Assembly (NCBI GenBank): GCA_029953675.1
Contig: JAMWBK010000001.1
Location: 3,596,001-3,660,000 of the forward strand
Length of the DNA stretch: 64,000 nt
From: Rhodosorus marinus CCMP1338
Taxonomy: Eukaryota > Plantae > Rhodophyta
Direction: 5' to 3'
The notes beneath the pieces were generated by a model. The model saw only the letters and a list, made by a program, of their open reading frames with translations, had not been told where the DNA came from and ran no database searches. The translations under genes and the position numbers were made by a program. Shown here one piece after another: positions 35,429 to 58,123 of this stretch. Within the stretch, counting starts at the first letter, position 1. Each line of letters starts with the position of its first letter.

Positions 35429-38122
35429 TTAGTCGTGATCAGCTGCACTCGATTGGTCGCTTTCCATCCGGTCCGAGCTCTTCCGGGGAAGCCGAATTGA
35501 TGAAGAGTTGTGGTTTTGAGGAGCGGAGGATGTAGTAGAGTTGGCTTCGAGTTGTAGACCGCTGGGGCTGGCTGGACTTAGGCTTAGACTGATGTCGCTC
35601 AGCGCCGGCAACTGAAACGCGGCCTCTCTGTCTCGCTCTCGCGCAATTAGCTTCCTCAGGAGGGTCCTATTCGGAGGGTACTGAATGTGACGATGCGATA
35701 AGTCCCTCATCATTTGCTGGACCTCCTCCGTGAATGGGATGTTGCCTCGGAACGCCATGCACCTCAGGACGGTGACAGCGTCATCGTGCAGGCCATGTCT
35801 CATCAAAGTTCTAATCATCTTCGCGTTGGGCCCCGCTCTTTGCAGGTCTATTCTCTTGTTAAGACTTGCATTCCGAATCTTGCGATTAAGATCAGGCTCG
35901 TACGATGTTTTGAAGGGCAGCCCATCGCCAGTCTTACCTTCACGAAGCGTGAAGGTCCTTCCCAGCCCATGGGATGCTGGGTCCTCCTCTCGGTCGAGAG
36001 GCAGCTTTTCAGCCTCCTCCTCAGACGGTGCATAGTCTCGCTGTTCCAACAGCGACACCTCTTCTCCATCGGAATGGTAATCCTCCTCCATGGACCCATT
36101 CAACAGCTCCGAATCGTTCAAGTTGTCCTCACCAGCCACTCCGGAGGCCGTGTGAGCCGCAGACGGAGCTTCTTCGTCTTCCTCAATGGGCTCGTATTCA
36201 CCTCTATCATCGTCCTCAACCTCCTCTTCTCGTACATTGCGCTGCTCACTCAGCTGCGCTAGGATCAACTTGAGCTCTTCTGTATGACCATCGGTATGTC
36301 GTTGTAAGTGCATCACCAATGCGTAAACTGACTCGACAAAGCCACGACTCTCCAGCTCTAAGCCAGAGCGCACCAGGTTCTTGAGAAGAGGCAATGCCTT
36401 CACAACGTTCCCACTGCGCACGAGCTCAATCACCAAGGCCATGTCGAGGGAAGTATTTCGAGCGAGATTATTCCGCTCCATCTCCTTAAGCTTACGCAGC
36501 GCCTCCGGTAGATTTCTGCTCTTCACTAATGCCCCCACAAGGAGCTCGTACTGCTCCGCGGTTGGCCTGAACCCATCCCTCTCCATGGAAGCGAGCACAT
36601 CCGTGACCTCGGAGATCTTCTCAGTAGACAGCAGCGTTTTCATCATGTTCGTGTACATTTGTTCACTGATGGGAACACGGAGATCACGACAGATCTGCAG
36701 GGTCATAAAACTACCATCGACATCCCGATTGGCAATGTCCATCATCTGAATACCCTCCATCATCGCCGTGTCCACGTACGCCGAGTTGAACACTTCCTTG
36801 ATCATCTTTCTGATCATGTTCGCATCGCCAACCTTCCCAGCTGTCGAGAGAATCCTTATTAGAGCTCTCATGGTCATGGGATCGACCTCGATCTTCTCCT
36901 CCAGAACGAGTTCCGCTGCCGCTACGACCATTTCGATTCCACCACCATCGTCACATCTGAGCTTCAGGTGACGCACAAGGAACTCCCTAGGGATCTTCAG
37001 CTGCGATAGGATCATCGAATCGACCACGGCGAGCTGAAATTCTGGATTGAATTCTGACGCATTCAGCATTATCTTGAGCAGCTCCGTAGGATCTCGACGC
37101 CTACCCATCCGCTCCATCAGTACGCCTCTTAGGATAGTCATGATGGTATCTGGGAGCTCGGACTTCACTTCGTACTTCAGCGCTGCTCGCAGATACCGTT
37201 CAAAAAGGGACTGAAACCATTCTGGATTCTCTAAAGTCCTGAAGTTGACCAGACTCTCTGTGAGGAGATTTTTCTCGCTTTTAGCGGTGTAGAGCTCTAC
37301 CATTCGAAGCATGAGCTCGTAGTTGTCGAAGATTGAGGATCCCTTCGGCGGAGGAGACTGGGCCTCCCTGGTTTTGAAGGCTTCGATCGACTTGTGGAGG
37401 TCGGTGAACTGATCTCTCGACGACAAAAAGTTTGCCAGGGCGAGGAGAGCCTCCGGTTTCTTTTCCGACGCGTGGTACCACTTGTTGGCTTCTTTCGCGC
37501 TTCCGCTCGAGGATATGAGGAGCGACGCCACGCCAACGGGGATTCCGGTCATGTCATTACGACGTTGAAGAAGATACGCGGCAGTAATTGCTGCAGATCG
37601 GCTGCTGATCTTGGTTGCATCGACGAATCCGTAGACGATCGCCTCCAACCTTTCCAGATCAGTTTCTTCCCTCTGGATTTGGCTCACAACAGCCCGTTCT
37701 CGGTCGGATCTCACATATGCCGACGCGAGGTGGCGAATGACAAGCGGGGAAGTCTTTACATGAGCTGGGAGAGTCCTGTACCAGGCTCTCATAGGTCCAT
37801 TGATTCGATCAGAACAGGCCAAAAGAGCCGAAGTGAATCCGATATCGTCTCGAAACCTCGATTTCAGATGTTCAAGCTCTCCGCTTGTCATTTTGGGAAG
37901 GTATTCAGACCATCGAACATGTCCATCAGCTCCTTTACCTCTCAGAGCTTCCAACTCGTCTTCAACAAGAGGCAGGAACGTTACCGGTGCCAAAGCCCCC
38001 GGAGTACGTAAATCACGGCCCGTCCGTTCAACATTTTGACCAACTCCCGGCGACTCCAGGTTCGAAATTTCTCTCGTATGCTTTCCTTTCAAGATTCTAA
38101 GATTCCATCTAGGACTATTCAT
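35429..38122 (-). CDS. Pentatricopeptide-repeat protein
   Basis: 897-aa ORF with consecutive PPR-like units: SEQMYTNMMKTLLSTEKISEVTDVLASMERDGFRP, TAEQYELLVGALVKSRNLPEALRKLKEMERNNLAR, NTSLDMALVIELVRSGNVVKALPLLKNLVRSGLEL. The true 5' end may lie further upstream. Confidence 0.8.
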   Translation of the reverse strand: MNSPRWNLRILKGKHTREISNLESPGVGQNVERTGRDLRTPGALAPVTFLPLVEDELEALRGKGADGHVRWSEYLPKMTSGELEHLKSRFRDDIGFTSALLACSDRINGPMRAWYRTLPAHVKTSPLVIRHLASAYVRSDRERAVVSQIQREETDLERLEAIVYGFVDATKISSRSAAITAAYLLQRRNDMTGIPVGVASLLISSSGSAKEANKWYHASEKKPEALLALANFLSSRDQFTDLHKSIEAFKTREAQSPPPKGSSIFDNYELMLRMVELYTAKSEKNLLTESLVNFRTLENPEWFQSLFERYLRAALKYEVKSELPDTIMTILRGVLMERMGRRRDPTELLKIMLNASEFNPEFQLAVVDSMILSQLKIPREFLVRHLKLRCDDGGGIEMVVAAAELVLEEKIEVDPMTMRALIRILSTAGKVGDANMIRKMIKEVFNSAYVDTAMMEGIQMMDIANRDVDGSFMTLQICRDLRVPISEQMYTNMMKTLLSTEKISEVTDVLASMERDGFRPTAEQYELLVGALVKSRNLPEALRKLKEMERNNLARNTSLDMALVIELVRSGNVVKALPLLKNLVRSGLELESRGFVESVYALVMHLQRHTDGHTEELKLILAQLSEQRNVREEEVEDDDRGEYEPIEEDEEAPSAAHTASGVAGEDNLNDSELLNGSMEEDYHSDGEEVSLLEQRDYAPSEEEAEKLPLDREEDPASHGLGRTFTLREGKTGDGLPFKTSYEPDLNRKIRNASLNKRIDLQRAGPNAKMIRTLMRHGLHDDAVTVLRCMAFRGNIPFTEEVQQMMRDLSHRHIQYPPNRTLLRKLIARERDREAAFQLPALSDISLSLSPASPSGLQLEANSTTSSAPQNHNSSSIRLPRKSSDRMESDQSSAADHD

Positions 38123-38257: not shown

Positions 38258-38562
38258 TTTCACATCTCCAACAGCCAGCTGGGTATTACTCAAATTATTC
38301 CATATTTCGAGTTTTATTCCCCCCTAATTACTCCCAAATTAGGTAATATATCCCAATTCTATCTTGTTCTTCTCTATCTTCTTCTTCTTCTCTCCAGCTA
38401 ACCTGGGAAATATCGAGTTTTGCCCATCGTACTTATACTCTTGCTCCATCGGGATGTGCAATAACTATTAAGCTCAAAAGGGTGTTGCACCTCCGGAGAT
38501 TTTGGCACAGCCCGAGCATAATTTTGCATAGCCGGACATTGCTGGAAGGTGGAGACGTCACA
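38258..38562 (-). repeat. 3' LTR of element 2
   Basis: 305 bp; differs from the 5' LTR by 4 substitutions and 1 indel by manual comparison. Confidence 0.97.
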
Positions 38563-41500
38563 TCCCTCCCACCGAAGAAGAAGCGCGGGGTCGGGCAGAT
38601 TCAGCAGCACGATGAAAGTTCATGTAGTAGCGAATTTGCCTTTTTGTAGCAGAGGTTTGTGGCAACTGGTGAGCTGCAATCCATCGAGCATCAGCTACTG
38701 TTTCCCCCTCGAAGTATACCATATATTCGCTGGTTCCCTCTGGTTTCATCCGATGACTAAGTACGGATGCGATTTCGCCTCCAGTCGCTGCTTCAGCTAC
38801 CAACTCGGGTATGTCGGGTTGTACGTTGTCGGGAGAACCGACAAATTTCCTCAGCAGGGAAACGTGGAACGTTGGATGTACCTTCATTTCGGTTGGTAAC
38901 TGCAGGATATAAGCGACATTGTTCACCTTACGCTGGATTCTGAAGGGTCCGGTGTATCGAGGTCTGAACGGTTTGGGATCTCGTAGCGGCAAGTTCGTGG
39001 TTGATAAGAGCACCATTTCGTCAGGGAAAAACTCAGGGTCACGCCTTCCCGCGTCGTAGCGGATTTTCTGTACTTGCTTTGAGTACAACATGTTGTTCCT
39101 TGCTGCCATGTATTGATCCTGCTGATGTCGTAAAAGAACTTCGGCTGCCTCAGGTAAGGGAGAAACGATAGCCTCCTCTGCACGTGGTACTATTAATGTT
39201 CCCGGTAGCTCAGGGTTTCGTCCGTACAGAAGTTCGAAGGGCGAATACTTAGTAGATTCCGATATTTGCGTGTTGTAGACCAACTCCGCCATGGAAAGAT
39301 CTGCGGCCCATGTAGTTCGGGTACTGTTGCATCGGAGGTATGTCTCCAACGTCTGATTGACTCGCTCCGTTTGTCCGTCCGTTTGCGGGTGATAGGCTGT
39401 ACTCAAATTCGTTCTGACCTTAAGTATACCCATCAGTCGTTGCCAGAATAGGCTGGTGAACTTAGAATCCCGGTCTGAAATTATGGTTCGGGGTAATCCC
39501 GCGAACCGTACCCAGTGTTCGAAGAATAATTCTGCCGTTTTCGCCGCATCTGCGTCCGTCCGGATTGGTATAAATTTCGAATATTTTGTGAGGCGATCGA
39601 CAATTACTGGGATTGGTCTTCCCATGACTACATCGGGAGCTGATGCAATCCTAGATCGCTTCACAAAATATTCGAAATTTATACCAACCCGGACGGACGC
39701 AGATGCGGCGAAAACGGCAGAATTATTCTTCGAACACTGGGTACGGTTCGCGGGATTACCCCGAACCATAATTTCAGACCGGGATTCTAAGTTCACCAGC
39801 CTATTCTGGCAACGACTGATGGGTATACTTAAGGTCAGAACGAATTTGAGTACAGCCTATCACCCGCAAACGGACGGACAAACGGAGCGAGTCAATCAGA
39901 CGTTGGAGAAACGATAGCCTCCTCTGCACGTGGTACTATTAATGTTCCCGGTAGCTCAGGGTTTCGTCCGTACAGAAGTTCGAAGGGCGAATACTTAGTA
40001 GATTCCGAGATTTGCGTGTTGTAGACCAACTCCGCCATGGAAAGATCTGCGGCCCATGTAGTTCGGGTACTGTTGCATCGGAGGTATGTCTCCAACGTCT
40101 GATTGACTCGCTCCGTTTGTCCGTCCGTTTGCGGGTGATAGGCTGTACTCAAATTCGTTCTGACCTTAAGTATACCCATCAGTCGTTGCCAGAATAGGCT
40201 GGTGAACTTAGAATCCCGGTCTGAAATTATGGTTCGGGGTAATCCCGCGAACCGTACCCAGTGTTCGAAGAATAATTCTGCGTTTTCGCCGCATCTGCGT
40301 CCGTCCGGGTTGGTATAAATTTCGAATATTTTGTGAAGCGATCGACAATTAGTAGGATTGCATCAGCTCCCGATGTAGTCATGGGAAGACTAACGATGAA
40401 ATCCATGGTGATGTCCTGCAACTTTGTTTCTGGTACAGGTAGCGGCTGTAGAAATCCTTGTGATGCCCGGAGTGGTTTCTGCTTTTGGCAGATTTCGCAC
40501 TTTCCAACCATTGATTGAACGTCATCCCTCATTGTGCGCCAATAATAACGTCTCTTCAAAAGGTTGACTGTTTTATGGAGACCGAAATGTCCTCCCGTGG
40601 GTTCCTCATGATATCGCCGTAGTAAGTCCGGTACGAATTTCTGGGGCACACAAACGCGATGATGTTTGTACAAGATGTCCCGCTTTCTACGAAATCCCTG
40701 CTCCTCGTACTTCACTGCTTCTGGGTAGACTGCTGCGAAATCAGGATCTTGTAGATATGCTCCGGTCCAATCTTCTTGGGGTAGTATACCGGAAACCGCC
40801 ATCTGGTTGATCGCTCCCCGGCTGAGTGGGTCCGCAATATTTTCCGCCCCTTTCTTGTATTCGATATTGAAGGAAAACGGCATTAAGCGATTCACATATC
40901 TCGCTTGTCCCTTGGTAAGCTCCTTTTGCGAGTGTAGAAAACGCAAAGGGTTATGGTCGGTGCGAAGCCCAAATCGTTGGCCCTCGACGTACGTCCGCCA
41001 ATGTAATACCGCTAGGGTCAACGCGTAGAGTTCCCGTTCATAAGTGGAATACTTCTCCTCCGTAGTGGTGAACCGCTGTGAGAAGTACGCAATTGGATGT
41101 TCTCCATCTTCAAAGGTTAGCAATAACACAGCCCCTACTCCCTTGTTACTGGCATCAGTACAAATTGTGAAGGTTTTTGTAAAATCCGGATTTCGTAGTA
41201 CTGGCTGCTGCATCAATTTCTCCCGCAGGGTGTCAAATGCTTTCTGTTGCTCCGGTCCCCACAGAAATTCTACATTCTTCCTCGTGAGGTTGGTCAGGGG
41301 TGCTGCTACCAGGCTGAATCGTGGCACATAGTTACGGAGATAGCCCGTAAAACCCAAGAAGGACCTGACATCGTGCACATTTTCTGGGACTTGCCAATTT
41401 TTAAGGGCGGCTACCTTGCTAGGATCCGGCCGTCGTCTCCCACTCCCAACCAGATGACCCAAATATTTCGTTTCTGGTACACCGAAGACGCACTTTGACC

Positions 41501-42932
41501 GCTTTGTATAGAGTCGGTGGTTTCTCAGCTTCGAGAAGACGATGTCTAGATGTCTTTTGTGGTCTTCCTTATTCGCCGAGTAGATAATAATGTCGTCAAA
41601 GAAGATCATGACGAAAACGTTTAACTCGTTGAAGAAAATACTGTTCAATAGTCGAGTAAACACAGCAGGAGCATTTGTCAGTCCAAACGGCATCACTAAC
41701 CACTCGTAAAGACCAAATGGCGTCGTGAACGCTGTTTTTGGAATGTCCTTCTTCTCCACGCGTAGTTGCCAGTAACCACTCCTCAAATCGATCACACTGA
41801 GATATGTGGCTTTGCCGAGAGCATCTAGACAATCGTCTATTCTTGGCGGGCTGGTCTTGTTGAGGATGGTTGCCTGGTTCAGTTTGCGGTAATCGATGCA
41901 CAATCGCCGCCCACCATCTTTTTTGTCCACAAAAAGACAGGGTGAAGCAAAAGGCGACGAGCTAGGTCGAACGAGGTTTTTGCTCAGCAAATCTTGTAGT
42001 TGAGTTTTCAGATCCTTCTGATCTGCAAGACTCATTCGGTATGGTCTTCGGGATGTTGGTTCAGTCCCCGGTTTCAGATCAATTGTAAAGTTGACGTTTC
42101 GCCAAGGGGCCAGGTTCTTAATGTCTTCCACAAAAACGTCAGCGTATTTATCCGTAATAAATTCCTCCAGATCTTTCGCCTCTTCCAGTCGTTTTTGTGT
42201 AAATTTCGTTATATTTTTGATTTCGGGTTCCTCCGTATAATTTTCAGGTTCTGGGTGGTCAGGTTGTTCAGGTTCTACTTCAGGGTTTTGTTCAGGTTCT
42301 TCTTCACTGTAATTCTCCCGGTTTTCTGGTTTCTGTTCAGGCTGAGTGACAAGTTCTTCAGCTTCTTCTGGTTGATTGCTCAGCTTGGCTTCTGGTTTAA
42401 TGGCTGGATCTGTTTCAGTTTCTTCGGGGTATTCAGGTTCTTCTGGGTATTCGGGTTCTTTTTCTGGTTTTCCTTCTGGTTTGATAAGTTTATCTTCTGG
42501 GTATTCGGGTTCTTCTGGGTATGCAGGTTCTTTTTCTGGGTTTAACATCAGCAGCTGGTTTGGTAGGTCGAGTCTCGCTTGATAGTAGCTGAGGAAATCT
42601 CTTCCCAAATATCCAGGGCTCGTAGCGTCTTCAACTACATAGGGCTGCCAATCGAAGTGATGACCACCTAGTTGTAGGGTCACGTTGGCTTCGCCCAAGA
42701 TTTTTATGGATGTGCCCGGCGAGGCCGTGTCCAATTTCCCGTGTTGAGTCGGAATTATTGTGGTGGCGTCCGGTCTTCCCCTCAAGACAGAGTGGCTGCT
42801 GCCTGTATCGACGAGCAGGGGGGTTACCTTGCCGTTGACCAACCCTTTGACTGTCATGTCCCCGTGGAGAGGGATAGGGACGCCTTGTTCAGCAACAGTA
42901 ACGGCGTCCCCTACTGCTGCTCCTCTTTTAAC
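38558..42932 (-). pseudogene. pol of element 2 (PR-RT-RH-IN-chromodomain) disrupted by a 1-nt deletion and a duplication-inversion in IN
   Basis: 876-aa ORF 40227-42857 leaves frame at DADAAKT. The IN core is repeated, and the IN C-terminus and chromodomain (EIASVLSHR..EYMVYFEG..ARWI) lie in ORF 38558-39796. Confidence 0.9.
39343..39909. repeat. ~256-bp near-perfect inverted repeat inside element 2 integrase
   Basis: Arms at 39343-39598 and 39654-39909 are reverse complements with about 2 mismatches. A third copy lies at 40089-40343. Confidence 0.95.
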
Positions 42933-48400: not shown

Positions 48401-50581
48401 CAACCGATAAGTTAACTCACCCGATGATGGTCGCTCTCTTGCATCGTTTTTCTGTCAAAGAACATAGTTACGGTGTGTGGCATTGATATACCTGCCCCCA
48501 AGGGGTTGGATACCTCCGTATGGAACTTCGCGTACGTACTCTTGGAGATCTTGAGGACCTTATCTTGTGCAGAGGAGCATCTACACAACGTTCACGATGC
48601 CATCTATTACTTGAAGGCGGCTGCATCTGTTGCGAATGCGTACGGAGCGACTGCGGTGGCGGCACAGGTGTTTGCTGATGCTGCGGTGATTGCTGCTCGC
48701 TCCGGTAGTATGGATGACTCAGCGGCCTGCATTGAGTCTGCAAAAGCGTGCCTATCGAGCGGTAACTCGTCGAGATTAGAGCAGATCAATAGTGCGTATG
48801 TAGCGCTGCGCGAGGCGGATGTTTTCTTGCTCCGCAACGAGTTGGATTCTGCCAGCAACCTCGTGAGTTCCGCTCGCAAGGTGGTGTTCTCCCGTGGCGT
48901 CGATATACTTCTTGAGGACGAGTGGAAATTTGAACCGGAGAAAACCCCACGAGAGGCGGCGCTGGTCGGCAAGGACCGTATACATCACGGTCAACAACGT
49001 CGAAGCTCCGAGTTGATCCCTCCAGACGATTACCCGCAGGACTTGCTCGCGCGACGGTTAGAACACGAGGCAATTCTGCTTGAAGCTCGTTGTGATATCT
49101 TTGAAGGACGCGCAGAGAAAGCATTGAAGGACGTTGGAAAGCAGGTGGAAAATGGAGACGGATCGTCTTGCGCAATTCTCGTCCATGCCTTCAGATCGAG
49201 TCACGGTACAGCACTTGAGAAACAGATCGATGCGACGTGGAGAGCGAGGACGCGAGGTCCACGAAACAAGACGCTGGAGACCTATCGCCAGCTATTGCAT
49301 GATGCAGAGGGAAAGAGTCGCCTAGGAAGCTTGGATCAACGCCAGATGAGACTCTTGCTTGCGGAAACAAACGACAACCCAATTCACAACTTGCTCGGGT
49401 CCGTAGGAGTAACTGCGGGCCTTCGTTATCTATCTAAGAACGGCAGCAGTGACACATCGTCTCTTGAAAACGAGTTAGGATTGCTTTCTCTGGGTGATGG
49501 ACAACTGTTGCAACGGATTCAGGAGGCGCTTCCAGAGAAATGGAACGTTGCTGGCTTGGCTTTAACGAGCGACCGCACTCACCTCTTGGCGTATCAGATT
49601 CGCAAGCGCTCGACCAAAATCGAAAGAATTGCCCTACGGTCACGAAGCTACGAAGCGTTGAACGAGGAGTTTCAGAAGATCCTTGGCGACGCGAAGGGTA
49701 CGAGCATCACCGCGGCGACATCTGTAGATTTAAAATCCGAGGACAAGAAGAACTGGTGGCAGAGCCGGCATGATCTTGACAAGCGGCTTGAAGACCTGTG
49801 CAAAAGGCTGGAGAAATCATGGCTACAATCTTGCGTGGACATGGTCCTCAACCAGACTGGCCCCACGATCCTGCTTGCCGATGACTCACTTCAACCGTTT
49901 CCGTGGGAGATGATGCCTTCAGTTCAGAGGAGGCAGCAGCAAATCTCGAGGATTCCTTGTGCCGAAGTTCTTATCGGTGGACTGGAGGCACGCAGCTGGG
50001 AGCGACCAGTCAACGGAAATCAGAGCTACTTCGTTCTCAATCCGGGCGGTGACCTGACGAGAACCCAGGAGCGGTTTGAAGGGATGTTCCGACACGAGTT
50101 TGGATGGAATGGTGCTTCAGGAAAACAAGAGGCTCAACATCTTGCCAGCGCCGGGTTGAGATCGTCCATCGAAAAATGCGAAGTATTTGTATATTGCGGA
50201 CATGGTGCCGCGGAGTCTGTCCTTCCCACGAGAGAAGTGAAGAAGCTGAAACGCGCGCCAGTGTCGCTCTTATTTGGCTGCTCATCTGGGAGACTCGAGA
50301 AGAACGGTATGTACGATTGTTCTGGAACAGTCTTGGAGTATCTGGTGTCGGGTTCCTCTTGTGTCGTAGCAACCCTCTGGGACGTCACAGATAGAGATAT
50401 TGATCGATTCACAGAGGCTATGCTTCGGGATTGGATGACAGGCAAGACTGTTGCTCAAACGGTTCAGAACGCGAGATCGGCCTGCAAGCTCAAGCACATC
50501 GTAGGCGCCGCTCCTATTGTATATGGCATACCGAGTATGCAAATCACTCACCCAGATGGTGTTCACAGAAGACTTTTTTAA
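45401..50581 (+). CDS. ESP1: Separase (peptidase C50), multi-exon; 5' end approximate
   Basis: C-terminal WWQSRHDLDKRL, PFPWEMMP, YFVLNPGGDL, FVYCGHG (catalytic His), LFGCSSG (catalytic Cys), VVATLWDVTDRDIDRF. Upstream + strand ORFs 45401-45922, 46287-47240 and 47247-48410 fit the long helical N-terminus. Confidence 0.92.
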
Positions 50582-50832: not shown

Positions 50833-53026
50833 TCACTCTTCCAGTTCAAGGCGAAAGTGCGTTTCAGGATTCACGAGTAGCTCGTCTTGCTTGTCTTCTT
50901 GTCCAATAATCAGCTCCTCTACTCGGCCCACGTCCACTGGGGATCCGACGAACATAGGAACCGACATTTCAAGACTCCTGCAGATGCCAACAGGAGCCAG
51001 GTACTCTTGTTAGTTTCTGCACGCAAGATCTCTTGAGTTGATTAGCGCGCGGCAGACATGCACATTGTGGGGCTTACCAGGAGTTAAGTTCGAGGACCTG
51101 GCGTTTGCCAACTGATGCCCTTCCCCCGGCTTGCCTCGCCAAGAAAGCCAACGGGGCAGCTACGCCGAGGAAGTGTGCCAAGTCGTTACCTTGAGGACCA
51201 GGCTTCATCAGGATACCGCCTTGCGTGAGGACTCGATGAAAGTTTGCAACGTCGTTATCCTCGTATCGGTAATATTTTACAATACGGTCGCTAGCTCCAG
51301 CTGCATCGCACTCCTCGACGTACTGCCTTACCGCCTCCTTCATCTGCGTTTGGTGGACAAAGAACAGGTTAGTTCCACAGATTAACCGAATAGAAGCATA
51401 CTCAACAAAATCGGCGGGACGGACTCACGTGACGGAGGTAAGTACAGTTGAGGCTGTAGACTGGCCCCATCTCAGGAATCTTCACGTGCTGATTCGAGAC
51501 AACAAAATGTCCCGAGACTGCATCCAGGATGAAAATATGCGTTCCGTACCCCATCGAAAGCACGAAAGACGTGTAGGAAGCATAGAAACAATATCCAGCT
51601 GCAACTTGCTCGTATCCAGTACGTGATAAAAGGTCCAGGGAGTCACCACTGTCGCCTGCATTGGACTTCCTGGAATATACTGAGAAGATTGTTCCCATTG
51701 TCCCGCCTTGAGACCCAACAAGCGGGTTGTAAACAACGATGTACTTGCCATCGGATCCAGATTCCAGAGGCATATTGGTCATGTACTGCGTGGAGTACAC
51801 CATACAGCAAAGTCCAGAAGCTGCTAGTGAAGCGTGCATCTGAGCGTTTGCAAACTCTACCAAAGCCGGAAAATCTGCATTCGACATATCGCGGAGGAAC
51901 GATCGAATGCACTTGAACGCAACACCAATTTCGGTCAGAAGGAGCGAAAGATCGTTGCTTCCATGCGGAAATCTTCTTTGAAGTTCCATGCAGAAGTGTT
52001 TGACACCGATCATTCGCTTATGCTTGTTTTCTTCCCTTAAGAAGTCCGGGAGCGGAACGCACTGATCGTCGTGTATAGACTCGCTACGACGAATGCCACT
52101 TTCGGCGCAAGCCGTCAGCGTCTCATTCATGATCTGCTTTGCCTGCTCCGTTGATATGGAGTATTCGTTTTTCAATGTCGTATTCGTTGGATTGACCTTC
52201 TTGCTAGTTAGTTTCCCGTCCATAACTTTTCTCCACGAATCGTGGCATTCCTTGACTATCTCCATCGCGTAGTGCGCGGGTTGCACGGTCTCCCTGAAAG
52301 CGAACAAGTTCTCAGGCTTCCCGTCTGGAATCTTGTACGTTCGAAACCAGGAAAATGTTGCATGCAGGAGTCCAGGCACCATCCTGGCGAGATCCAGAAT
52401 TTTCCGCACGTGCACAGCGCGAGGAAGCGTTCAGTTCCGGAATAGTGCCTCCCTTGGTGCTCTGCAATGGAACATGCGGAGCAGTCTCACCTCTTAAGAT
52501 CTTCGACGTTGTTAACCTGCTCTGCCAGGGGATCTCCTACTCGAATAACCAAGACCTTCCAATCCATTTCTCCTTCGTCAATCATTCCCAGTACACCGAG
52601 GACTTTGACCTGGTGAACCTGTCCGATATTAGCGATGGAAGAACCGATCTCGCATACATCCAAAGGGTCTCCATCTCCAAGTGCACCTGTCTCCATGTGG
52701 ACTTCTGATGGGTTCTCCCATGTCTGAGGAAAACATCCGTAGTTCCAAATGTAACCCTTATACGGAAACACGTCATGAACATACCTCTTCTTTCCTTTCT
52801 TCTTATCCTGAATGACTTGCGACAGAGGATCCCCGGTCTTCAGCTCCAACTTGGCATTCGTTTCTCTCGGGATCTCAACGACCATGTTGAGAATCCCCTT
52901 CTCCGCATCTGCGAAGAGAGGAATATCGTTCAGCGGATTAATCAACCCATGATCCTTTTTCTTAAAGAAGTACGTCTCCTCGTGGGATTCACCGCCAATC
53001 ACACTGTATTCGTCTTCAAACTCCAT
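50833..53026 (-). CDS. Family I inorganic pyrophosphatase fused to a C-terminal degenerate fructose-1,6-bisphosphatase-like domain (633 aa, 3 introns)
   Basis: Exons 53026-52491, 52383-51429, 51343-51078 and 50977-50833 total 1902 nt, in frame, with GT-AG introns. PPase motifs: EIPRETNAKLE, YIWNYGCFPQTWE, DGDPLDV, GMIDEGEMDWK, FRTYKIPDGK. FBPase-like motifs: GKYIVVYNPLVGS, GTIFSVY, QVAAGYCFY, VKIP..GPVYSLN, FHRVLTQGGI, APLAFLARQAGG, PMFVGSP. Confidence 0.9.
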
Positions 53027-54549
53027 ATTGTCATGGACAGGCCCTCCCACAAAAAAACAACTCTACTCTACAAACCAAAATTTCCCAAGACTTTGTGGCT
53101 GATCTACCCTCTCTATCCTCTTAAGCTACCGCTCTCTCAGACACCCAGTCCGTGTCACACCTCTTTCCTTCTTTTAAAAGCTTCAGAACAGAGAAAAAAT
53201 CAGCCCACCCAAACGACCAAATCCTACCCGACAGTTTTTTTCAAAGTTTCCATACGGCCACAACCGACCGGCTGATGTTACCTTCCGCACCATTGGCCTT
53301 TTACCAATCGCCCCGCAACCCCCAGTATGTATCTCCTCGGAAATATTTTTTTTGAGTTTCTATACGGCCACAGATCCCGCGGCTAATGACACTCCGCCTG
53401 GGGAACATTGGCCTTGACCGCCTTCCCCCTTTGGGTCCACCTAAAATGTTCTGTAAAACATACACCCATTCAGCCAACTCTGACGTGGAATATCATCCAC
53501 TCGAAGCGACAGCCTGTCAAAAACCTTTTTCGGAAAAAAAGAGCTGGGTTAAGTCTCCCTCGTCGGTCCACCCAATTCTATTTTGGTTAAACGTGGGTAT
53601 GGAAGCGGAATGTCCCGGCAGGTGGGACTGTCCCAGATGTTGTGCCTTTCTGGAAATCTTGACTACAGACAAGCCGGGCGAGAGTGTGAAATGTCGATGA
53701 TCAATATCGGCGCACTCGTTGTATTACTCGCTGCTCGTAATGTTCATGATAGGCTTATTGATGTAGAAGTGAACTCTCCCACATTTTGGATATATCACGG
53801 ATCCTTCTTCGCTCCCGAACTCAAGAGAGTGGTTTCATCGCGCTCGAAGTCAATATGGTGAGACAGAAAAGCAGTTTCGCTCGCCAGAGCCTTGCATTGG
53901 GGTTGGGTTCTAGATGGTGGTGACGTGTTGTGCAGGCGGTCACATAGCCTGCACTGAACTACAGGGTCGAGTCAGTTGCAACGACTAGAAGCTCTACTTG
54001 CGAATGACTAGATCTTCCTCACAAAGAACCAATTCGAGTTGCTTTCCCGAAGCGAAGCTGCCATAGCCGCCAACAGAAGGCGAGAACACTTCGTCTTCCG
54101 AACATACTCGTCTGCACCTCGGTTCGGGGAAGGGGAAGGCTCTCCGTGGTAGTTGGAGCAGTGGCTGTAACCTCTACAGAAGCAAAGGGACGTGCAGATC
54201 TTGGTTCTATGATTTTCCAAATTTTTACCAGACACAAAAAAGCTATTGTTGCAAATTAAAACTTCTCCACCTTCGACGCCCTCCCAGCTCAATCTTCGTT
54301 ACGTCCCAGCCACAGCCAAAAAAGGAAACAAACCCACACAATCCAAACCAAACCGAAACAGCGACGGGATGGGTAGTCTCTGTTCCCTCTATATGTCTTT
54401 TCCTCTCGACCTACTTTTCTAGTTCAATCCTGGCTACAATCTCTCCATAGCAACCAGACCCCACGATATGCTTCTGCGATTTCATTGGGCTACTTGCTAG
54501 GAAAGAGTTATTTATCGTCATCCCATTGAGGATACGCACTCTACAAAGT

Positions 54550-55776
54550 TTAGTTAGCGCTGAGCTGCGTTGCTACTCGTCGCTCTGCCTCATCATAAGT
54601 TACATACTCGCCGTCGTCGTACACTTGACAGTTAGAGACGATCTCGTCGCACAGTTTCAACGAGAATGATGTTTCGTTGATGTACTGTCCCCAATTCTTC
54701 TGGATGGACTCGTGAGCAGCCTTCAAGTTGTAGCTCGGGATTTTCGTAGACACGTGATGCGGAATGTGAACGTTGATATCGTGGCACAGAATCTCAATCC
54801 AACGCGGAAAGTCGCAGTGCACGGTTCCAGACAGTTGAGCCTTGGCTGCGTTCCACTCCGATTTGTCAGTAAACTGGATATGCGGAGCAGTGTGATGGAT
54901 CAAGGTGAACGCAGACATCCAGAAATGATATCCCAGCCACGGCATCAGCCAGAACTTCACGAAAGCCCAAGGGCCACCGAGGGCGAAAAGAGTTGGGAAG
55001 GCGATTCCGGCAAAGATGGCACAGCACAGCCAAGAAACCTTAACCTTGGGCAGCTGCTTCTCTGTGAACTTCTTCGGGTTGAAATGGTAGTTAACCCAGT
55101 GAAGAATTGAGAGCTGATACCACAGTGTCGTCCATATCAACTTGAGTACCTTGGCGACGGTCTTCGGGCGGCTCACCCCCCTGAACATGGACTTCTGAAG
55201 TGGCTGCCATGCATTGTCGGCCACGAACCCTTCTGGGTCGTCACGGTTGCGGAGCATGTTAGTATTCCTGTGGTGAATATTGTGCTGAATTCTCCACGGC
55301 TCGAACGGATAGATAAGCATCGATAAAGATACATTTCCGACGATGTCATTCAGCTTCTGGTTCTTCGAGAATGAGTTGTGCCCGGCATCGTGACCGATAA
55401 CGAAGATGCCAGTCGCTGCAGTACCCGCGAGAAACCAAGCGACCGGAAGAAGATACCACGGGGAGAAATGGATTGCTACAAGCGACAGAGGGACGGCCAC
55501 TGCCGTAACAAACACATGCAGCCATGACTTTCTCTCGTCAATCTCGAAAACCTCCTTAGGCATCGTCCTCACCACATCCGTCAAGGACACACCATCGGGA
55601 AGAACCTTGGCCGGTCTTGACCTGAAGGCCGACTCGTCTTCCGGAATCTTATACTGCACAGTCTCAACCGGTTTCGCTTCAATCACCGACCGAACCACAC
55701 GCGACCTTCTCGTGGTCTGAACTTTTCTAGACGTCATCACCCCGCCACATCCTCCAACAAATCCAAGAGAACTCAT
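54550..55776 (-). CDS. FAD6: Plastid omega-6 (delta-12) fatty acid desaturase
   Basis: Three His boxes (HDAGH, HNIHH, HIPHH); KFWLMPWLGYHFWMSAFT; transit peptide MSSLGFVGG from the ATG at 55776. Confidence 0.94.
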   Translation of the reverse strand: MSSLGFVGGCGGVMTSRKVQTTRRSRVVRSVIEAKPVETVQYKIPEDESAFRSRPAKVLPDGVSLTDVVRTMPKEVFEIDERKSWLHVFVTAVAVPLSLVAIHFSPWYLLPVAWFLAGTAATGIFVIGHDAGHNSFSKNQKLNDIVGNVSLSMLIYPFEPWRIQHNIHHRNTNMLRNRDDPEGFVADNAWQPLQKSMFRGVSRPKTVAKVLKLIWTTLWYQLSILHWVNYHFNPKKFTEKQLPKVKVSWLCCAIFAGIAFPTLFALGGPWAFVKFWLMPWLGYHFWMSAFTLIHHTAPHIQFTDKSEWNAAKAQLSGTVHCDFPRWIEILCHDINVHIPHHVSTKIPSYNLKAAHESIQKNWGQYINETSFSLKLCDEIVSNCQVYDDGEYVTYDEAERRVATQLSAN

Positions 55777-58123
55777 TCTTGCTGAAATACCAGCAACCAC
55801 CACACCCAAACAACCCACAACGATCGAGCTCCTCCGCCTTCCCGCACAACCCTCCGACCCAACCCTTTCCCACACCCAACTTTATATACCAGTCTCCCAA
55901 GGTTTTTACAAAGACAAGCAATCTTCCACGTTCTCACTTGCCAACCCCTCGTGCTACCAATCTCACCCTGACGCTACCCTGTCGTAAGAACCACTGCCCT
56001 TACCGCCGCCTTTATCCGAAATCATGCACCCCCGCACACTCCTACAGTCCAATGGAAGACCTGTTATTTTCCATCAAAAAACCCCCATCGATCGAAAATA
56101 AAAGAAATCCACATGTACTATTTATCTGTCACTATTCCTAAACATTCCATTTATTCAGTATTCAATCATTATCATGAAGAATATCAACCCTTTGCTCTTC
56201 CTATGGCGCAGTGCATTTTATGCCATAAAATAACCTAATTAGAGGTTAGATGATCCTGAAACAGTTGAAGTTAGCTTACCCTTGGAAAGATTAAAAGTCT
56301 CAGTCTTTCTTAAATATGTCTTTTGCTATTAATTTGCGTACAGGATCGATTGTGAGGTGACGCTTAAAAGATAAGTTTGAACAATAGCAATGGGTGGGGA
56401 GTTTTTTCCGTCAACGTGAGGCAGCTGGTTATCTTTCAGGGTTTTTAGATTTTTTAATGATTAAAAATTATGAGGAAACCCGATTGGCGGGAGGTGAAGC
56501 GCTCTTGATTTAATTAGAATTTGTAGAGAGATAAACAAATTGGTTGGATGAGGTCTTCAGGACTACAATCAATATTCTGTTACCAATAAATCGATTGGTG
56601 ATCGATACGAATAAAATCCTATGATCTGCCAGTAATGGAATGCTATCCACCCTTCATTGAGGCAGTTTTCAGTCAATATGGTATTGATGGAGTAAATGAT
56701 TGGATAGGCTATATATTAAAACGTAAATTATTTTTGATGGCTTTCTGTTAAACAAATTATCTGCTCTTGATCAATCAAATCATCCCACGTCTGAGTATCC
56801 AATCAATTTCGTACGCATGTATCCAAGTTTTGTTGAGAGTAAGTTCCATGGAAGCTCGATACCCGCTCAATGATTTGACGTCTTTTTTTTTTATTTACTT
56901 TCTTTGTTCTTTCTTTCCACTATTTTGGGGAAGGGGTTGGGGGGGGGGGCCGTTGAGGGGGCCGTTGAGGGGAAACGTTGAGTGGGGCCAAAAAAGGCAC
57001 GTTCTCGGAGGTGCAGACCTCCTCTTGTTGTCCGCCTTTCAAACCCCCCGCCTCCTGGCCCTGCCCGATCTGTGCAACTTTGAACGTATATAGAGTATTT
57101 TTCTTTTATTATTTGAAAATGAATCTGATTTTTCCTGCTTTTTCAGCTGGGGTATGTGGCACGAGCCTAGAAAATCCGTTTTGAGGGATTCCTGCTCCAA
57201 TTTTGTAGAGGTCTATCAACTTATGTGCTCGGAAGTGTATAAGTAATGGCTGTATATGTAAGGTATATAACCTACAAGACCTTTTTTTATTACTTGAAAC
57301 AATTTTAATATCGTTTGGAAGCGTTAGCGGCCACGGTCTAAAGATGATTAGTACAGAATACGAATAGTACTAATATCACTAATCGTGTTTGATTGAACTG
57401 AACGCATACATTGACTGGCCTCCGCAAATGCCAACAGCTGTATTGTGAATGTTGTACAAATAATTACTTTATATTGAAGGTATATATGTTATTTGTATCG
57501 TTTCAAATTATAAAAATTCGAACTTATAGGGTATATACGTTCAGGACAAATCTTAGCAGAACTATGGAGTGGTCAGTAGAACATTTACTTGGGCAAACTT
57601 TGTAAGATCGATCATCTTCAACTCGCCCTCAGGAGCCAGGCCACGAACTTCGACTTCAAAGTCGCTGGCTTGGCTCCTGAGGGCGACGATTCCGCGGCGC
57701 TCTAAGCAGCAGGAAGCAGCTCGGGAACGAACGGTTGTCGGTGCTTGCTGTGCTCACAGGCAGTGCATTGCGGGTAGGTGCGAACCTTACAACATGGAGA
57801 TTTAGATGTTCCGGATGCATGTCTGTCGAGAAGCATGGAGCGATATGGGTCCAAGCATAAGATAGCCGCCGGTTAGACATTTGACCGGCTGTGCCTCTGC
57901 TACAACGCATACAACGTGTTACACACATTCATTAGAAGAGAACTTCTGAATATATACATGTTGTCCCGTGGAGGGAGACGCTTCGAGCGTACGCGCTGAA
58001 TTCATGTTCAGCGGATATGCAGATTCATATCTGCTCCTCAACGGGTAACCAAACTGGCGGTGGAGATGACTCGAGCGTATACGCTGAACATGAATCTGCT
58101 CCTCAACGGTAACGGAACTGGCG

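What the first reader, a model, noticed from the sequence alone, without database searches (positions are those of the whole stretch)
50833..53026. Active-looking pyrophosphatase fused to a catalytically dead FBPase fold: candidate metabolite-sensing PPase
Seen: one 633-aa reading frame, with the domain junction inside exon 2 (no stop or intron), so the fusion is not a gene-model artefact. The PPase keeps its catalytic set (E.PR..NAK, NYG, DxDPxD, DEGExDWK, YK). The second domain follows class I FBPase along its whole length and resembles the cytosolic type (VAAGYC.Y; YSLN..; QYVEEC). However, the metal and catalytic ligands are replaced: SEE to STQ, DPLDGS to NPLVGS, KKLD to PALV, the RLLYE Glu is lost, and the dynamic loop is deleted. 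There is no transit peptide, so it is likely cytosolic. Established: cytosolic PPi and fructose-1,6-bisphosphate are linked through PPi-dependent phosphofructokinase and UDP-glucose pyrophosphorylase. Inference: the dead domain may bind sugar phosphates or AMP, or oligomerise with true FBPase, to tune PPi hydrolysis to carbon flux. I do not recall this architecture being characterised.
Basis: partly seen in the sequence, partly recalled or inferred. Interest (0 to 1): 0.85.

Follow-up and report, generated by a model that had tools for sequence, protein, structure and literature searches.

The report
Pyrophosphatase fused to dead FBPase domain
This red-alga gene (Rhodosorus marinus) encodes a normal-looking pyrophosphate-splitting enzyme joined to a full copy of a sugar-phosphatase fold that has lost its catalytic residues yet has been kept across red algae and their sister lineage Rhodelphis; no paper found describes it, and the extra domain probably regulates or assembles the enzyme.

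Summary
On the minus strand, four exons (53026-50833) give one 633-aa protein. It is 100% identical to Rhodosorus marinus NDN08_005895.

- **PPase part:** residues 10-260 are a eukaryotic-type family I pyrophosphatase. All 14 yeast active-site residues are present and invariant in 18 orthologues.
- **FBPase-like part:** residues 305-610 are a complete class I FBPase fold (AlphaFold pLDDT 92, TM 0.84-0.93 to solved FBPases). The metal ligands, the catalytic loop and most 6-phosphate ligands are replaced or deleted. This holds in all 17 relatives aligned.
- **The fusion is real:** the junction lies inside exon 2. The gene is one intron-less ORF in four other red-algal contigs, and whole transcripts encode the fusion.
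- **The fusion is old and narrow:** it occurs in cyanidiophytes, Rhodosorus and florideophytes, and in the non-photosynthetic sister lineage Rhodelphis. An exhaustive profile search found it nowhere else.
- **The dead domain is under selection:** its dN is 0.04-0.09, against 0.04-0.12 for the PPase core, with synonymous sites saturated.

The sugar-phosphate site is gone, so canonical FBP or F2,6BP sensing is unlikely. The AMP-loop region and a linker R-x-x-S motif are invariant or nearly so. I read it as an active cytosolic PPase with a regulatory or assembly pseudoenzyme domain. Nine literature searches found no description, only database names.

The parts
50833..53026 (-). Whole coding region of the PPase/pseudo-FBPase fusion gene: 4 exons, 633 codons plus stop (R. 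marinus NDN08_005895).
   Evidence: splice model and translation; 100% identical to P0001 over 633 aa.
52491..53026 (-). Exon 1: residues 1-178 and two bases of R179. Intron 1 is 52384-52490 (107 nt, GT..AG).
51429..52383 (-). Exon 2: residues 179(part)-497. It contains the PPase/FBPase-like domain junction. Intron 2 is 51344-51428 (85 nt, CTAAC branch site).
51078..51343 (-). Exon 3: residues 498-585 and two bases of W586. Intron 3 is 50978-51077 (100 nt, CTAAC branch site).
50833..50977 (-). Exon 4: residues 586(part)-633 and the stop codon (50833-50835).
52140..52999 (-). Family I (eukaryotic/yeast IPP1-type) inorganic pyrophosphatase domain, residues 10-260 (interrupted by intron 1). All 14 active-site residues are intact.
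52008..52139 (-). Inter-domain linker, residues 261-304. Poorly conserved (12-34% identity) except for one motif.
52065..52094 (-). Conserved linker motif I276-R-R278-S-E-S281-I-H-D-D285. The pattern is hydrophobic(-5), R/K(-3), S(0), hydrophobic(+1). It is a candidate phosphorylation site.
   Evidence: S281 invariant, R278 at least 90%; motif in all 36 red-algal sequences listed, not in Rhodelphis.
50905..52007 (-). Class I FBPase-like pseudoenzyme domain, residues 305-610 (interrupted by introns 2 and 3). The fold is intact; metal ligands, catalytic loop and most substrate ligands are lost.
51945..51968 (-). Invariant P-H-G-S-N-D-L-S (residues 318-325), at the position of the AMP phosphate-binding loop of FBPase (human A24-T31).
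   Evidence: The loop is also kept in Rhodelphis P0040.
50836..50904 (-). C-terminal tail, residues 611-633, beyond the end of ordinary FBPases. It is partly conserved in the family and the model has low confidence there.
53236..53372 (.). Two 27-nt direct repeats (53236-53262 and 53346-53372; core TTTCYATACGGCCACA), 210-350 bp upstream of the ATG. Possibly promoter elements; function untested.
   Evidence: 2 matches in the window, 0 expected by chance.

Best explanation
The gene encodes a cytosolic, catalytically active family I inorganic pyrophosphatase. Its C-terminal half is a full-length class I FBPase fold turned into a non-catalytic pseudoenzyme domain.

Shown:
- The PPase active site is intact and invariant.
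- The FBPase-like domain folds like FBPase but lacks the metal ligands, the catalytic loop and most substrate ligands, in every member examined.
- The fusion is one transcript and one ORF.
- It dates to before the split of red algae and Rhodelphis.
- The dead domain is under purifying selection as strong as that on the PPase.

Inferred:
- The pseudo-domain is a regulatory and assembly module for the PPase.
- The most likely mechanism keeps the parts of FBPase that do allostery and oligomerisation. These are the invariant P-H-G-S-N-D-L-S loop at the AMP phosphate site, Y113, V160, R22, K42 and R243. Through them the domain would bind an adenine nucleotide or another phospho-ligand at the former AMP site, and/or switch quaternary state.
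- That would gate PPi hydrolysis.
- An invariant R-x-x-S site in the otherwise free-evolving linker would add control by a protein kinase of the SnRK1/AMPK/CDPK type.

Physiological reading (inference): red algae make floridean starch from UDP-glucose (and, from my own knowledge, in the cytosol, along with floridoside). UDP-glucose pyrophosphorylase therefore releases PPi there. A PPase that is switched with energy or carbon status would set how strongly that flux is pulled.
For: - Gene model and identity.
- PPase: 2e-84 to yeast IPP1, about 55% identity to fungal cytosolic PPases, 14 of 14 catalytic residues invariant in 18 sequences.
- Fold: AlphaFold pLDDT 92.4, pTM 0.90. Foldseek TM 0.84-0.93, rmsd 1.9-3.4 A to human, pig and E. 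coli FBPases.
- Dead site family-wide: E97 to S/T/A, D118 to N/T/S, D121 to C/V/T/S, loop with D68 deleted, D74 lost, Y264 to L/K/M, K274 to L.
- Retained: S321/N322/D323/L324/S325 loop (D, L and the first S in 17/17; N in 16/17; last S in 14/17), Y393 17/17, V439 17/17, R523 (R243) 17/17; R315 (R22) and K336 (K42) invariant in the 18-sequence A2 alignment.
- Selection: identity to the window protein is 53-73% for the FBPase-like part, 63-78% for the PPase and 12-34% for the linker. dN is 0.042-0.086 for the FBPase-like part and 0.043-0.123 for the PPase core, while four-fold sites differ at 67-82%, i.e. saturated. Both R. marinus paralogues are equally conserved.
- One ORF, one mRNA: four intron-less ORFs. 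Whole transcripts exist in R. marinus (MMETSP), Eucheuma (TSA) and Rhodelphis (Trinity).
- Range: the exhaustive profile search gives one full-length cluster at 647 bits, then Rhodelphis, Cyanidium and fragments, then a drop to 200 bits or less for ordinary FBPases.
- Linker motif.
- Red algae also have ordinary cytosolic and plastid FBPases (PMC7195585). They make storage starch from UDP-glucose via UGPase (PMC13560127 and PMC13306765).
Against: - There are no biochemical data of any kind: PPase activity, ligand binding, oligomeric state, phosphorylation and location are all untested.
- The AMP site is not fully canonical. G28 is N. K112 is N in 16 of 17 (K only in the window protein). The R140 equivalent depends on gap placement.
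- The retained 'allosteric' residues are also conserved in many ordinary FBPases, so they could be kept for folding alone.
- The full-length model failed (pLDDT 38), so nothing is known about contacts between the two domains.
- Rhodelphis lacks the linker R-x-x-S motif.
- The roles I assign to R22, K42, R243 and the AMP-loop residues come from my own knowledge of pig and human FBPase work, not from a tool result.
Confidence: 0.45

Rival explanations
1. The domain is a pure assembly scaffold. It binds no ligand. It only supplies FBPase-type dimer or tetramer interfaces, so that the PPase works as a higher-order oligomer (for stability, cooperativity or localisation).
For: - The whole fold and its helices are kept at high model confidence, and the best structural matches are tetrameric FBPases.
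- Conservation is spread along the whole domain.
- Yeast-PPase position H87 is K in 18/18. Position W52 is E in both Rhodosorus paralogues and G in one other sequence. From my own memory, these two positions lie at the yeast PPase dimer interface, so the usual PPase dimer contact may be altered.
Against: - A scaffold does not explain why the short loop at the old AMP phosphate site is among the most invariant stretches of the domain, even in Rhodelphis.
- It does not explain why the linker keeps one R-x-x-S motif.
Confidence: 0.25
2. The domain partners with the true FBPase, in the manner of a prozyme or a metabolon. The dead domain would form mixed dimers or tetramers with the alga's real cytosolic FBPase. 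This would tether PPase to it or modulate it, for example by donating R243 to the partner's active site.
For: - R243 reaches into the neighbouring subunit's 6-phosphate site in ordinary FBPase (my own knowledge). It is invariant in 17/17 although the domain's own site is dismantled.
- Red algae do have ordinary cytosolic FBPase (PMC7195585).
- FBPase and PPase are both irreversible steps on the route from triose phosphate to UDP-glucose.
Against: - There is no interaction evidence.
- The pseudo-domain is only about 30% identical to ordinary FBPases, so interface compatibility is doubtful.
- R243 may be kept for structural reasons.
Confidence: 0.12
3. The domain has a new catalytic activity. 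The FBPase-like part would have evolved a different, metal-independent or differently liganded reaction, so the protein would be bifunctional.
For: - Strong purifying selection.
- Family-specific invariant residues: H471 for E, N531 for D, R567 for E, the inserted R433, and the conserved cysteines C310, C337, C371, C372 and C444.
Against: - Every acidic metal ligand that defines this phosphatase superfamily is gone in the window protein.
- The one acidic ligand that survives in most members (E280, 14/17) is V here and in Cyanidiococcus, and M in the R. marinus paralogue P0002.
- No alternative constellation of invariant catalytic-type residues is evident.
Confidence: 0.05
4. The fusion is a gene-model artefact, or the domain is a decaying remnant.
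For: None found.
Against: - The junction lies inside exon 2.
- Four intron-less single ORFs exist in other species.
- Transcripts span both domains.
- dN is as low as in the PPase.
- The fusion is kept from cyanidiophytes to florideophytes and in Rhodelphis.
Confidence: 0.01

Closest known systems
Eukaryotic family I soluble inorganic pyrophosphatase (yeast IPP1, human PPA1; PF00719)
   Same: The N-terminal 260 residues are an ordinary member. The match to solved yeast PPase is E 2e-84 and identity to fungal cytosolic PPases is about 55%. All 14 active-site residues are present.
   Different: It carries a C-terminal extension of about 370 residues (linker plus FBPase fold). Yeast position H87 is K throughout the family, and W52 is E in Rhodosorus.
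Class I fructose-1,6-bisphosphatase (PF00316 + PF18913; Li+-sensitive phosphatase fold)
   Same: It has the full two-subdomain fold, with TM 0.84-0.93 and about 30% identity to human, pig and E. coli enzymes. Structural Gly/Pro positions, R243, Y113, and residues of similar chemistry in the AMP loop are kept.
   Different: E97, E98, D118 and D121 are replaced. The 52-72 loop (D68) is deleted and D74 is lost. K274 and R276 are lost and Y264 is replaced. E280 is V in this protein. It cannot be an FBPase in the known sense.
CBS-domain family II pyrophosphatases of bacteria (nucleotide-regulated PPases). Analogy from my own knowledge.
   Same: The concept is shared: a PPase made regulatable by an added non-catalytic domain that binds adenine nucleotides.
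   Different: The PPase family is different (family II, DHH). The regulatory fold is different (CBS/DRTGG inserted within the enzyme rather than a C-terminal FBPase fold). No CBS domain is present here. Regulation of the red-algal protein is not shown.
PPase fusions to PPi-producing enzymes (ATP sulfurylase / APS kinase / PPase proteins of stramenopiles and other algae). From my own knowledge; PMC4220642 and PMC2705460 turned up but were not read.
   Same: A family I PPase is joined in one polypeptide to a second metabolic fold.
   Different: In those proteins the partner is an active enzyme whose PPi product the PPase removes. Here the partner is catalytically dead and does not make PPi.
Pseudoenzyme partners of metabolic enzymes (trypanosomatid 'prozymes'; non-catalytic roles of mammalian FBP1/FBP2). 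From my own knowledge.
   Same: An enzyme fold is kept under selection for a non-catalytic, regulatory or binding role.
   Different: Those are separate polypeptides or still-active enzymes. I found no report of a dead FBPase fold fused to a PPase.

Membership tests
Family I soluble inorganic pyrophosphatase (PF00719) | Profile match above the curated threshold. | tested here: met
   148.5 bits against a cut-off of 23.5. E 2e-84 to solved yeast PPase.
Family I soluble inorganic pyrophosphatase (PF00719) | Complete set of active-site residues (yeast E48, K56, E58, R78, Y89, Y93, D115, D117, D120, D147, D152, K154, Y192, K193). | tested here: met
   All 14 are present and invariant in 18 family members.
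Family I soluble inorganic pyrophosphatase (PF00719) | Mg2+-dependent hydrolysis of PPi. | not testable with these tools
   Needs an enzyme assay.
Class I FBPase (PF00316 + PF18913) | Profile matches and the two-subdomain fold. | tested here: met
   92.8 and 70.5 bits, above cut-offs of 34.8 and 27. Model pLDDT 92; TM 0.84-0.93 to solved FBPases.
Class I FBPase (PF00316 + PF18913) | Metal-binding acidic residues E97, E98, D118, D121 and E280 (motif D-P-[IL]-D-G-[ST]). | tested here: not met
   The window protein has T377, Q378, N398, V401 and V558. The first four are non-acidic in all 17 members.
Class I FBPase (PF00316 + PF18913) | Catalytic dynamic loop 52-72 with D68, and D74. | tested here: not met
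   About 15 residues are deleted in all 17 members. D74 is V in the window protein and A/S/Q/L/E/R in the others.
Class I FBPase (PF00316 + PF18913) | Substrate 6-phosphate and sugar ligands N212, Y215, Y244, Y264, K274 and R243'. | tested here: not met
   Y264 is K544 and K274 is lost in the window protein. N491, Y494, Y524 and R523 are kept here. In most relatives N212 is D, Y215 is V and Y244 is H; only R243 is invariant.
Class I FBPase (PF00316 + PF18913) | AMP allosteric site (T27, G28, E29, L30, T31, K112, Y113, R140, V160, M177). | tested here: inconclusive
   The window protein has S, N, D, L, S, K, Y, (S or R by gap placement), V, M. The loop is invariant in the family, but G28 is N, and K112 is N in 16 of 17. 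Binding needs an experiment.
CBS-type regulated pyrophosphatases | Family II (DHH/DHHA2) catalytic core with inserted CBS domains. | tested here: not met
   Only PF00719, PF00316 and PF18913 are found above their thresholds. This is an analogy of concept only.
SnRK1/AMPK/CDPK substrate site | Hydrophobic(-5), basic(-3 or -4), Ser(0), hydrophobic(+4). | tested here: inconclusive
   The motif is present in all 36 red-algal sequences listed. In the window protein I276, R277/R278 and S281 fit, but +4 is D, not hydrophobic. Phosphorylation is not testable here.

The most novel reading that the evidence does not exclude
The dead FBPase fold is an allosteric sensor of an adenine nucleotide (or another phospho-metabolite), re-used from FBPase's own AMP site and quaternary switch. 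Together with a kinase site in the linker, it would turn a housekeeping pyrophosphatase into a gated valve for cytosolic PPi in the whole red-algal lineage. That would be a eukaryotic counterpart of the bacterial CBS-pyrophosphatases, built from a different fold. The fusion itself would be a rare genomic character shared by Rhodophyta and Rhodelphidia.
Probability: 0.3. Interest if true: 0.75.

Novelty: new variant of a known kind. Interest (0 to 1): 0.6.

Why it matters
How cytosolic PPi is controlled in photosynthetic eukaryotes is an old question. Land plants keep cytosolic PPase activity low and use PPi as an energy donor (my own knowledge).

Red algae make their storage glucan from UDP-glucose, and do so in the cytosol (my own knowledge), so PPi is released there. 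A PPase with a built-in, strongly conserved regulatory pseudo-domain would be an obvious control point for carbon storage. That bears on starch, floridoside and agar/carrageenan precursors in farmed seaweeds.

It would also be a clean case of an enzyme fold kept for over a billion years (my rough estimate) after losing catalysis. And it supplies a discrete fusion character linking Rhodelphis to red algae. If the domain proves to be only a scaffold, the finding is a modest addition to the list of pseudoenzyme domains.

Tried and rejected
1. **Full-length AlphaFold model** with 18 orthologues failed (pLDDT 38.5). Domain arrangement is therefore unknown. The domain-only model with 109 sequences worked, but its coordinates are not readable, so I could not map conservation onto surfaces or inspect the AMP pocket.
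2. **A formal dN/dS** could not be obtained. Even the closest pairs (86-89% protein identity) have saturated synonymous sites: NG86 dS is undefined, and YN00 gave 1.44 once and failed otherwise. I report dN and four-fold-site differences instead.
3. **Ancestry of the FBPase-like domain** (cytosolic, plastid or bacterial type) cannot be told. Scores to E. coli, mammalian and chloroplast enzymes are nearly equal, and the library representatives carry no names.
4. **The PPase-domain homologue search** listed only fungal-type PPases in its best 120. It did not show whether red algae also have a stand-alone cytosolic PPase, so that question stays open.
5. **Nine literature searches** and four papers read found no description of the fusion. 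One further search failed on syntax.
6. **Genomic neighbours** give no functional hint and were not pursued: separase, a fatty-acid desaturase, a retroelement, an ABC1 kinase and a PPR protein.
7. **Longer FBPase-containing proteins** from the exhaustive search were scanned for other PPase fusions. Only Rhodelphis has one.
Full report
**What is there**

The finding lies on the minus strand. Reading the three frames of the reverse complement and joining four exons gives a 1902-nt coding sequence and a 633-aa protein. The exons are 53026-52491, 52383-51429, 51343-51078 and 50977-50833. The three introns (107, 85 and 100 nt) are GT..AG, and the last two carry CTAAC branch sites. A residue-to-coordinate map was checked. 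The protein is identical in sequence and length to a deposited protein of the red alga Rhodosorus marinus, 'hypothetical protein NDN08_005895' (P0001).

Pfam finds three domains far above threshold: Pyrophosphatase at residues 48-229, FBPase at 306-475 and FBPase_C at 481-608. Exon 2 encodes residues 180-497.

**The pyrophosphatase half**

Residues 10-260 align without gaps, up to residue 238, to solved yeast IPP1 (E 2e-84). Their closest database relatives outside the family are fungal cytosolic PPases at about 55% identity. With the offset from that alignment (window = yeast + 3), all 14 yeast active-site residues are present. All 14 are invariant in 18 family members. The protein starts only three residues before the position where yeast IPP1 starts, so there is no room for a transit peptide. 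I take a cytosolic location as the simplest reading; it is an inference.

**The FBPase-like half**

Sequence searches of solved structures match class I FBPases over the whole domain. E. coli scores 127 bits, human liver 122 and pea chloroplast 121.

An AlphaFold model of residues 300-633, built on 109 sequences, is confident (pLDDT 92.4, pTM 0.90). It superposes on human, pig and E. coli FBPases with TM 0.84-0.93 and rmsd 1.9-3.4 A. The fold is therefore intact.

The chemistry is not. In human FBP1 numbering:
- E97 and E98 are T377 and Q378.
- D118 and D121 are N398 and V401.
- E280 is V558.
- K71-K72-L-D74 is P-A-L-V.
- About 15 residues covering the dynamic loop, with D68, are deleted.
- Four residues of the SSNID turn are deleted.
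- K274 and R276 are lost.
- Y264 is K544.

**It is a family, not a one-off**

A search with the C-terminal half found 26 relatives at 46-77% identity. Most of the full-length ones carry all three Pfam domains. The next hits are ordinary FBPases at about 32% identity. Named sources include:
- Gracilaria domingensis, whose annotators called it 'inorganic pyrophosphatase fused with fructose-1 6-bisphosphatase';
- Galdieria sulphuraria, G. partita, G. yellowstonensis and G. phlegrea;
- Cyanidiococcus yangmingshanensis and Cyanidium caldarium;
- Hildenbrandia rubra and Eucheuma denticulatum;
- a second R. marinus gene, NDN08_000775;
- a JGI name, 'fructose-1,6-bisphosphatase/inorganic pyrophosphatase'.

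An exhaustive profile search of 1.84 billion cluster representatives used the dead domain alone. It returned one full-length representative at 647 bits, then a few fragments, then a steep drop to 200 bits or less for ordinary FBPases. One hit in between, P0040, is a Trinity transcript of Rhodelphis limneticus. From my own knowledge, Rhodelphis is the non-photosynthetic sister lineage of red algae. Its protein has the PPase C-terminus followed by the same loop-less FBPase fold without the acidic ligands. The fusion and the loss of catalysis therefore predate the Rhodophyta/Rhodelphis split. Nothing like it was found in any other group.

**The fusion is real and expressed**

Besides the single-exon junction, four red-algal contigs carry the gene as one intron-less ORF of 644-650 codons (L001-L004). 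Full-length fused ORFs also come from transcriptomes: MMETSP Transcript_14856 of R. marinus (the paralogue), a Eucheuma TSA record and the Rhodelphis assembly. I found no transcript of the window gene itself.

**The dead domain is under selection**

Across 17 members, the metal and loop residues are non-canonical in every one. The structural Gly/Pro positions are kept.

Identity to the window protein:

| Region | Identity |
|---|---|
| FBPase-like part | 53-73% |
| PPase | 63-78% |
| Linker | 12-34% |

In three codon comparisons the synonymous sites are saturated: four-fold sites differ at 67-82%. dN is 0.042-0.086 for the FBPase-like domain, 0.043-0.123 for the PPase core and 0.17-0.42 for the linker region. 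In one pair the dead domain is the better conserved of the two (90% against 83%). A formal omega cannot be given because dS is saturated, but it is clearly far below 1. The two R. marinus paralogues are equally close to 16 outgroups, so neither is decaying.

**What is kept, and what that suggests**

The sites that would hold fructose phosphates are largely gone in the family: Y264 to L/K/M, K274 to L, Y215 to V, and G246, S247 and M248 replaced. Sensing of F1,6BP or F2,6BP in the known manner is therefore unlikely.

In contrast, some stretches are invariant:
- The loop P-H-G-S-N-D-L-S (residues 318-325) is invariant or nearly so, and it is kept in Rhodelphis.
- Y393, V439, R315, K336 and R523 are invariant.

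From my own knowledge of pig and human FBPase, these positions correspond to the AMP phosphate loop (T27-T31), Y113, V160, R22, K42 and R243. That is the allosteric site, the inter-subunit relay and the trans-acting arginine. This is a lead, not a test: G28 is N, and K112 is N in 16 of 17.

A second conserved feature sits in the otherwise variable linker. It is one motif: hydrophobic(-5), R/K(-3), Ser(0), hydrophobic(+1). S281 is invariant and R278 nearly so. The motif is present in all 36 red-algal sequences I listed, for example LGRSNSWLDM, LTRNQSLAEI, LRREASISQL and, in the window, GIRRSESIHDD. It fits the minimal SnRK1/AMPK/CDPK recognition pattern (my own knowledge). Rhodelphis lacks it.

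**Most likely mechanism**

I commit to an active cytosolic PPase whose pseudo-FBPase domain is a regulatory and assembly module.

| Reading | Probability |
|---|---|
| Regulated: a ligand at the old AMP site and/or a quaternary switch, plus linker phosphorylation | about 0.45 |
| Ligand-free oligomerisation scaffold | 0.25 |
| Heteromer with the true cytosolic FBPase | 0.12 |
| New catalytic activity in the dead domain | 0.05 |
| Artefact or decaying remnant | 0.01 |

The metabolic rationale is inferred. Red algae have ordinary cytosolic and plastid FBPases as well (PMC7195585). They make floridean starch from UDP-glucose through UGPase (PMC13560127, PMC13306765). PPi is thus produced in the compartment where, from my own knowledge, storage carbohydrate is made. 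The pathway maps in the passages of those papers that I read do not include a PPase.

**Comparison with what is known**

- The N-terminal half is a member of family I PPases.
- The C-terminal half is a structural member of the class I FBPase fold, but it fails every catalytic membership test.
- The nearest concept is the bacterial CBS-domain PPase, which is regulated by nucleotides. Both the catalytic and the regulatory folds differ from those here.
- The PPase fusions to ATP sulfurylase/APS kinase known from other algae join it to an active PPi-producing enzyme. That is a different logic.

Nine full-text searches and four papers read found no description of this fusion. The library lacks most subscription journals, so an existing note cannot be excluded. 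The database names show that annotators have seen the architecture.

**Verdict**

The finding is a new variant of a known kind: a PPase with a previously uncharacterised, lineage-wide pseudoenzyme module. Interest is 0.6.

Noticed in passing
window 52065-52094 (-), residues 276-285: The only conserved feature of the variable linker is an R/K(-3)...Ser(0) motif with flanking hydrophobic residues. S281 is invariant and R278 at least 90%. It is present in all 36 red-algal sequences listed but not in Rhodelphis. It fits the SnRK1/AMPK/CDPK recognition pattern, so it is a candidate phosphorylation site.
   Followed up: partly
P0213 (R. marinus NDN08_000775, 653 aa) compared with the window gene: R. 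marinus has two paralogues of the fusion, about 71% identical. Both are equally close to 16 outgroup sequences. The MMETSP full-length transcript belongs to the other paralogue, not to the window gene.
   Followed up: partly
window 53236-53262 and 53346-53372: Two 27-nt direct repeats lie 110 bp apart, 210-350 bp upstream of the start codon (core TTTCYATACGGCCACA). They are the only two matches in the window; 0 are expected by chance. They may be promoter elements.
   Followed up: partly
window 51074-51079 (start of intron 3); P0003: Reading into intron 3 gives '...LELNSW' and then a stop. The MMETSP protein P0003 (312 aa, a relative at 68% identity) ends with exactly LELNSW. This looks like a transcript with this intron retained, and suggests the intron position is shared.
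   Followed up: no
window residues E55, K90 and W94 (52862-52864, 52757-52759, 52745-52747, minus strand): Yeast PPase positions W52, H87 and H91 are changed. H87 is K and H91 is W in 18/18 family members. W52 is E in both Rhodosorus paralogues. From memory, W52 and H87 sit at the yeast PPase dimer interface, so the usual PPase dimer contact may be altered.
   Followed up: partly
P0040 (Rhodelphis limneticus, EukProt EP00735): The Rhodelphis orthologue has an insert of about 110 aa, rich in Ser, Thr and Gln, between the two FBPase subdomains. It lacks the linker R-x-x-S motif. The record is N-terminally incomplete.
   Followed up: partly
P0149 (658 aa; origin not looked up): This is another degenerate FBPase fold. 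D121 is M, the E97/E98 region is non-acidic and the loop is missing. It is fused to an unrelated 350-aa N-terminal region with no Pfam match. Dead FBPase folds may have been recruited more than once.
   Followed up: no
P0041 (766 aa, ENA/JGI metagenomes; 91-member cluster): A tandem double class I FBPase. Its first copy also lacks the 52-72 loop, while its second copy is canonical.
   Followed up: no
window 38558-42857 (-): ORFs of a Ty3/gypsy-type LTR retroelement: aspartyl protease, reverse transcriptase, RNase H, integrase zinc domain and a Tf2-1-like SH3 domain.
   Followed up: no
window 48473-50581 (+), 54550-55875 (-), 17926-19707 (-), 35429-38122 (-): Neighbouring genes are a separase C-terminal part (Peptidase_C50; convergent, ending 252 bp from the fusion gene's stop codon), a fatty-acid desaturase, an ABC1 atypical kinase and a PPR protein. 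No functional link to the fusion gene is apparent.
   Followed up: no
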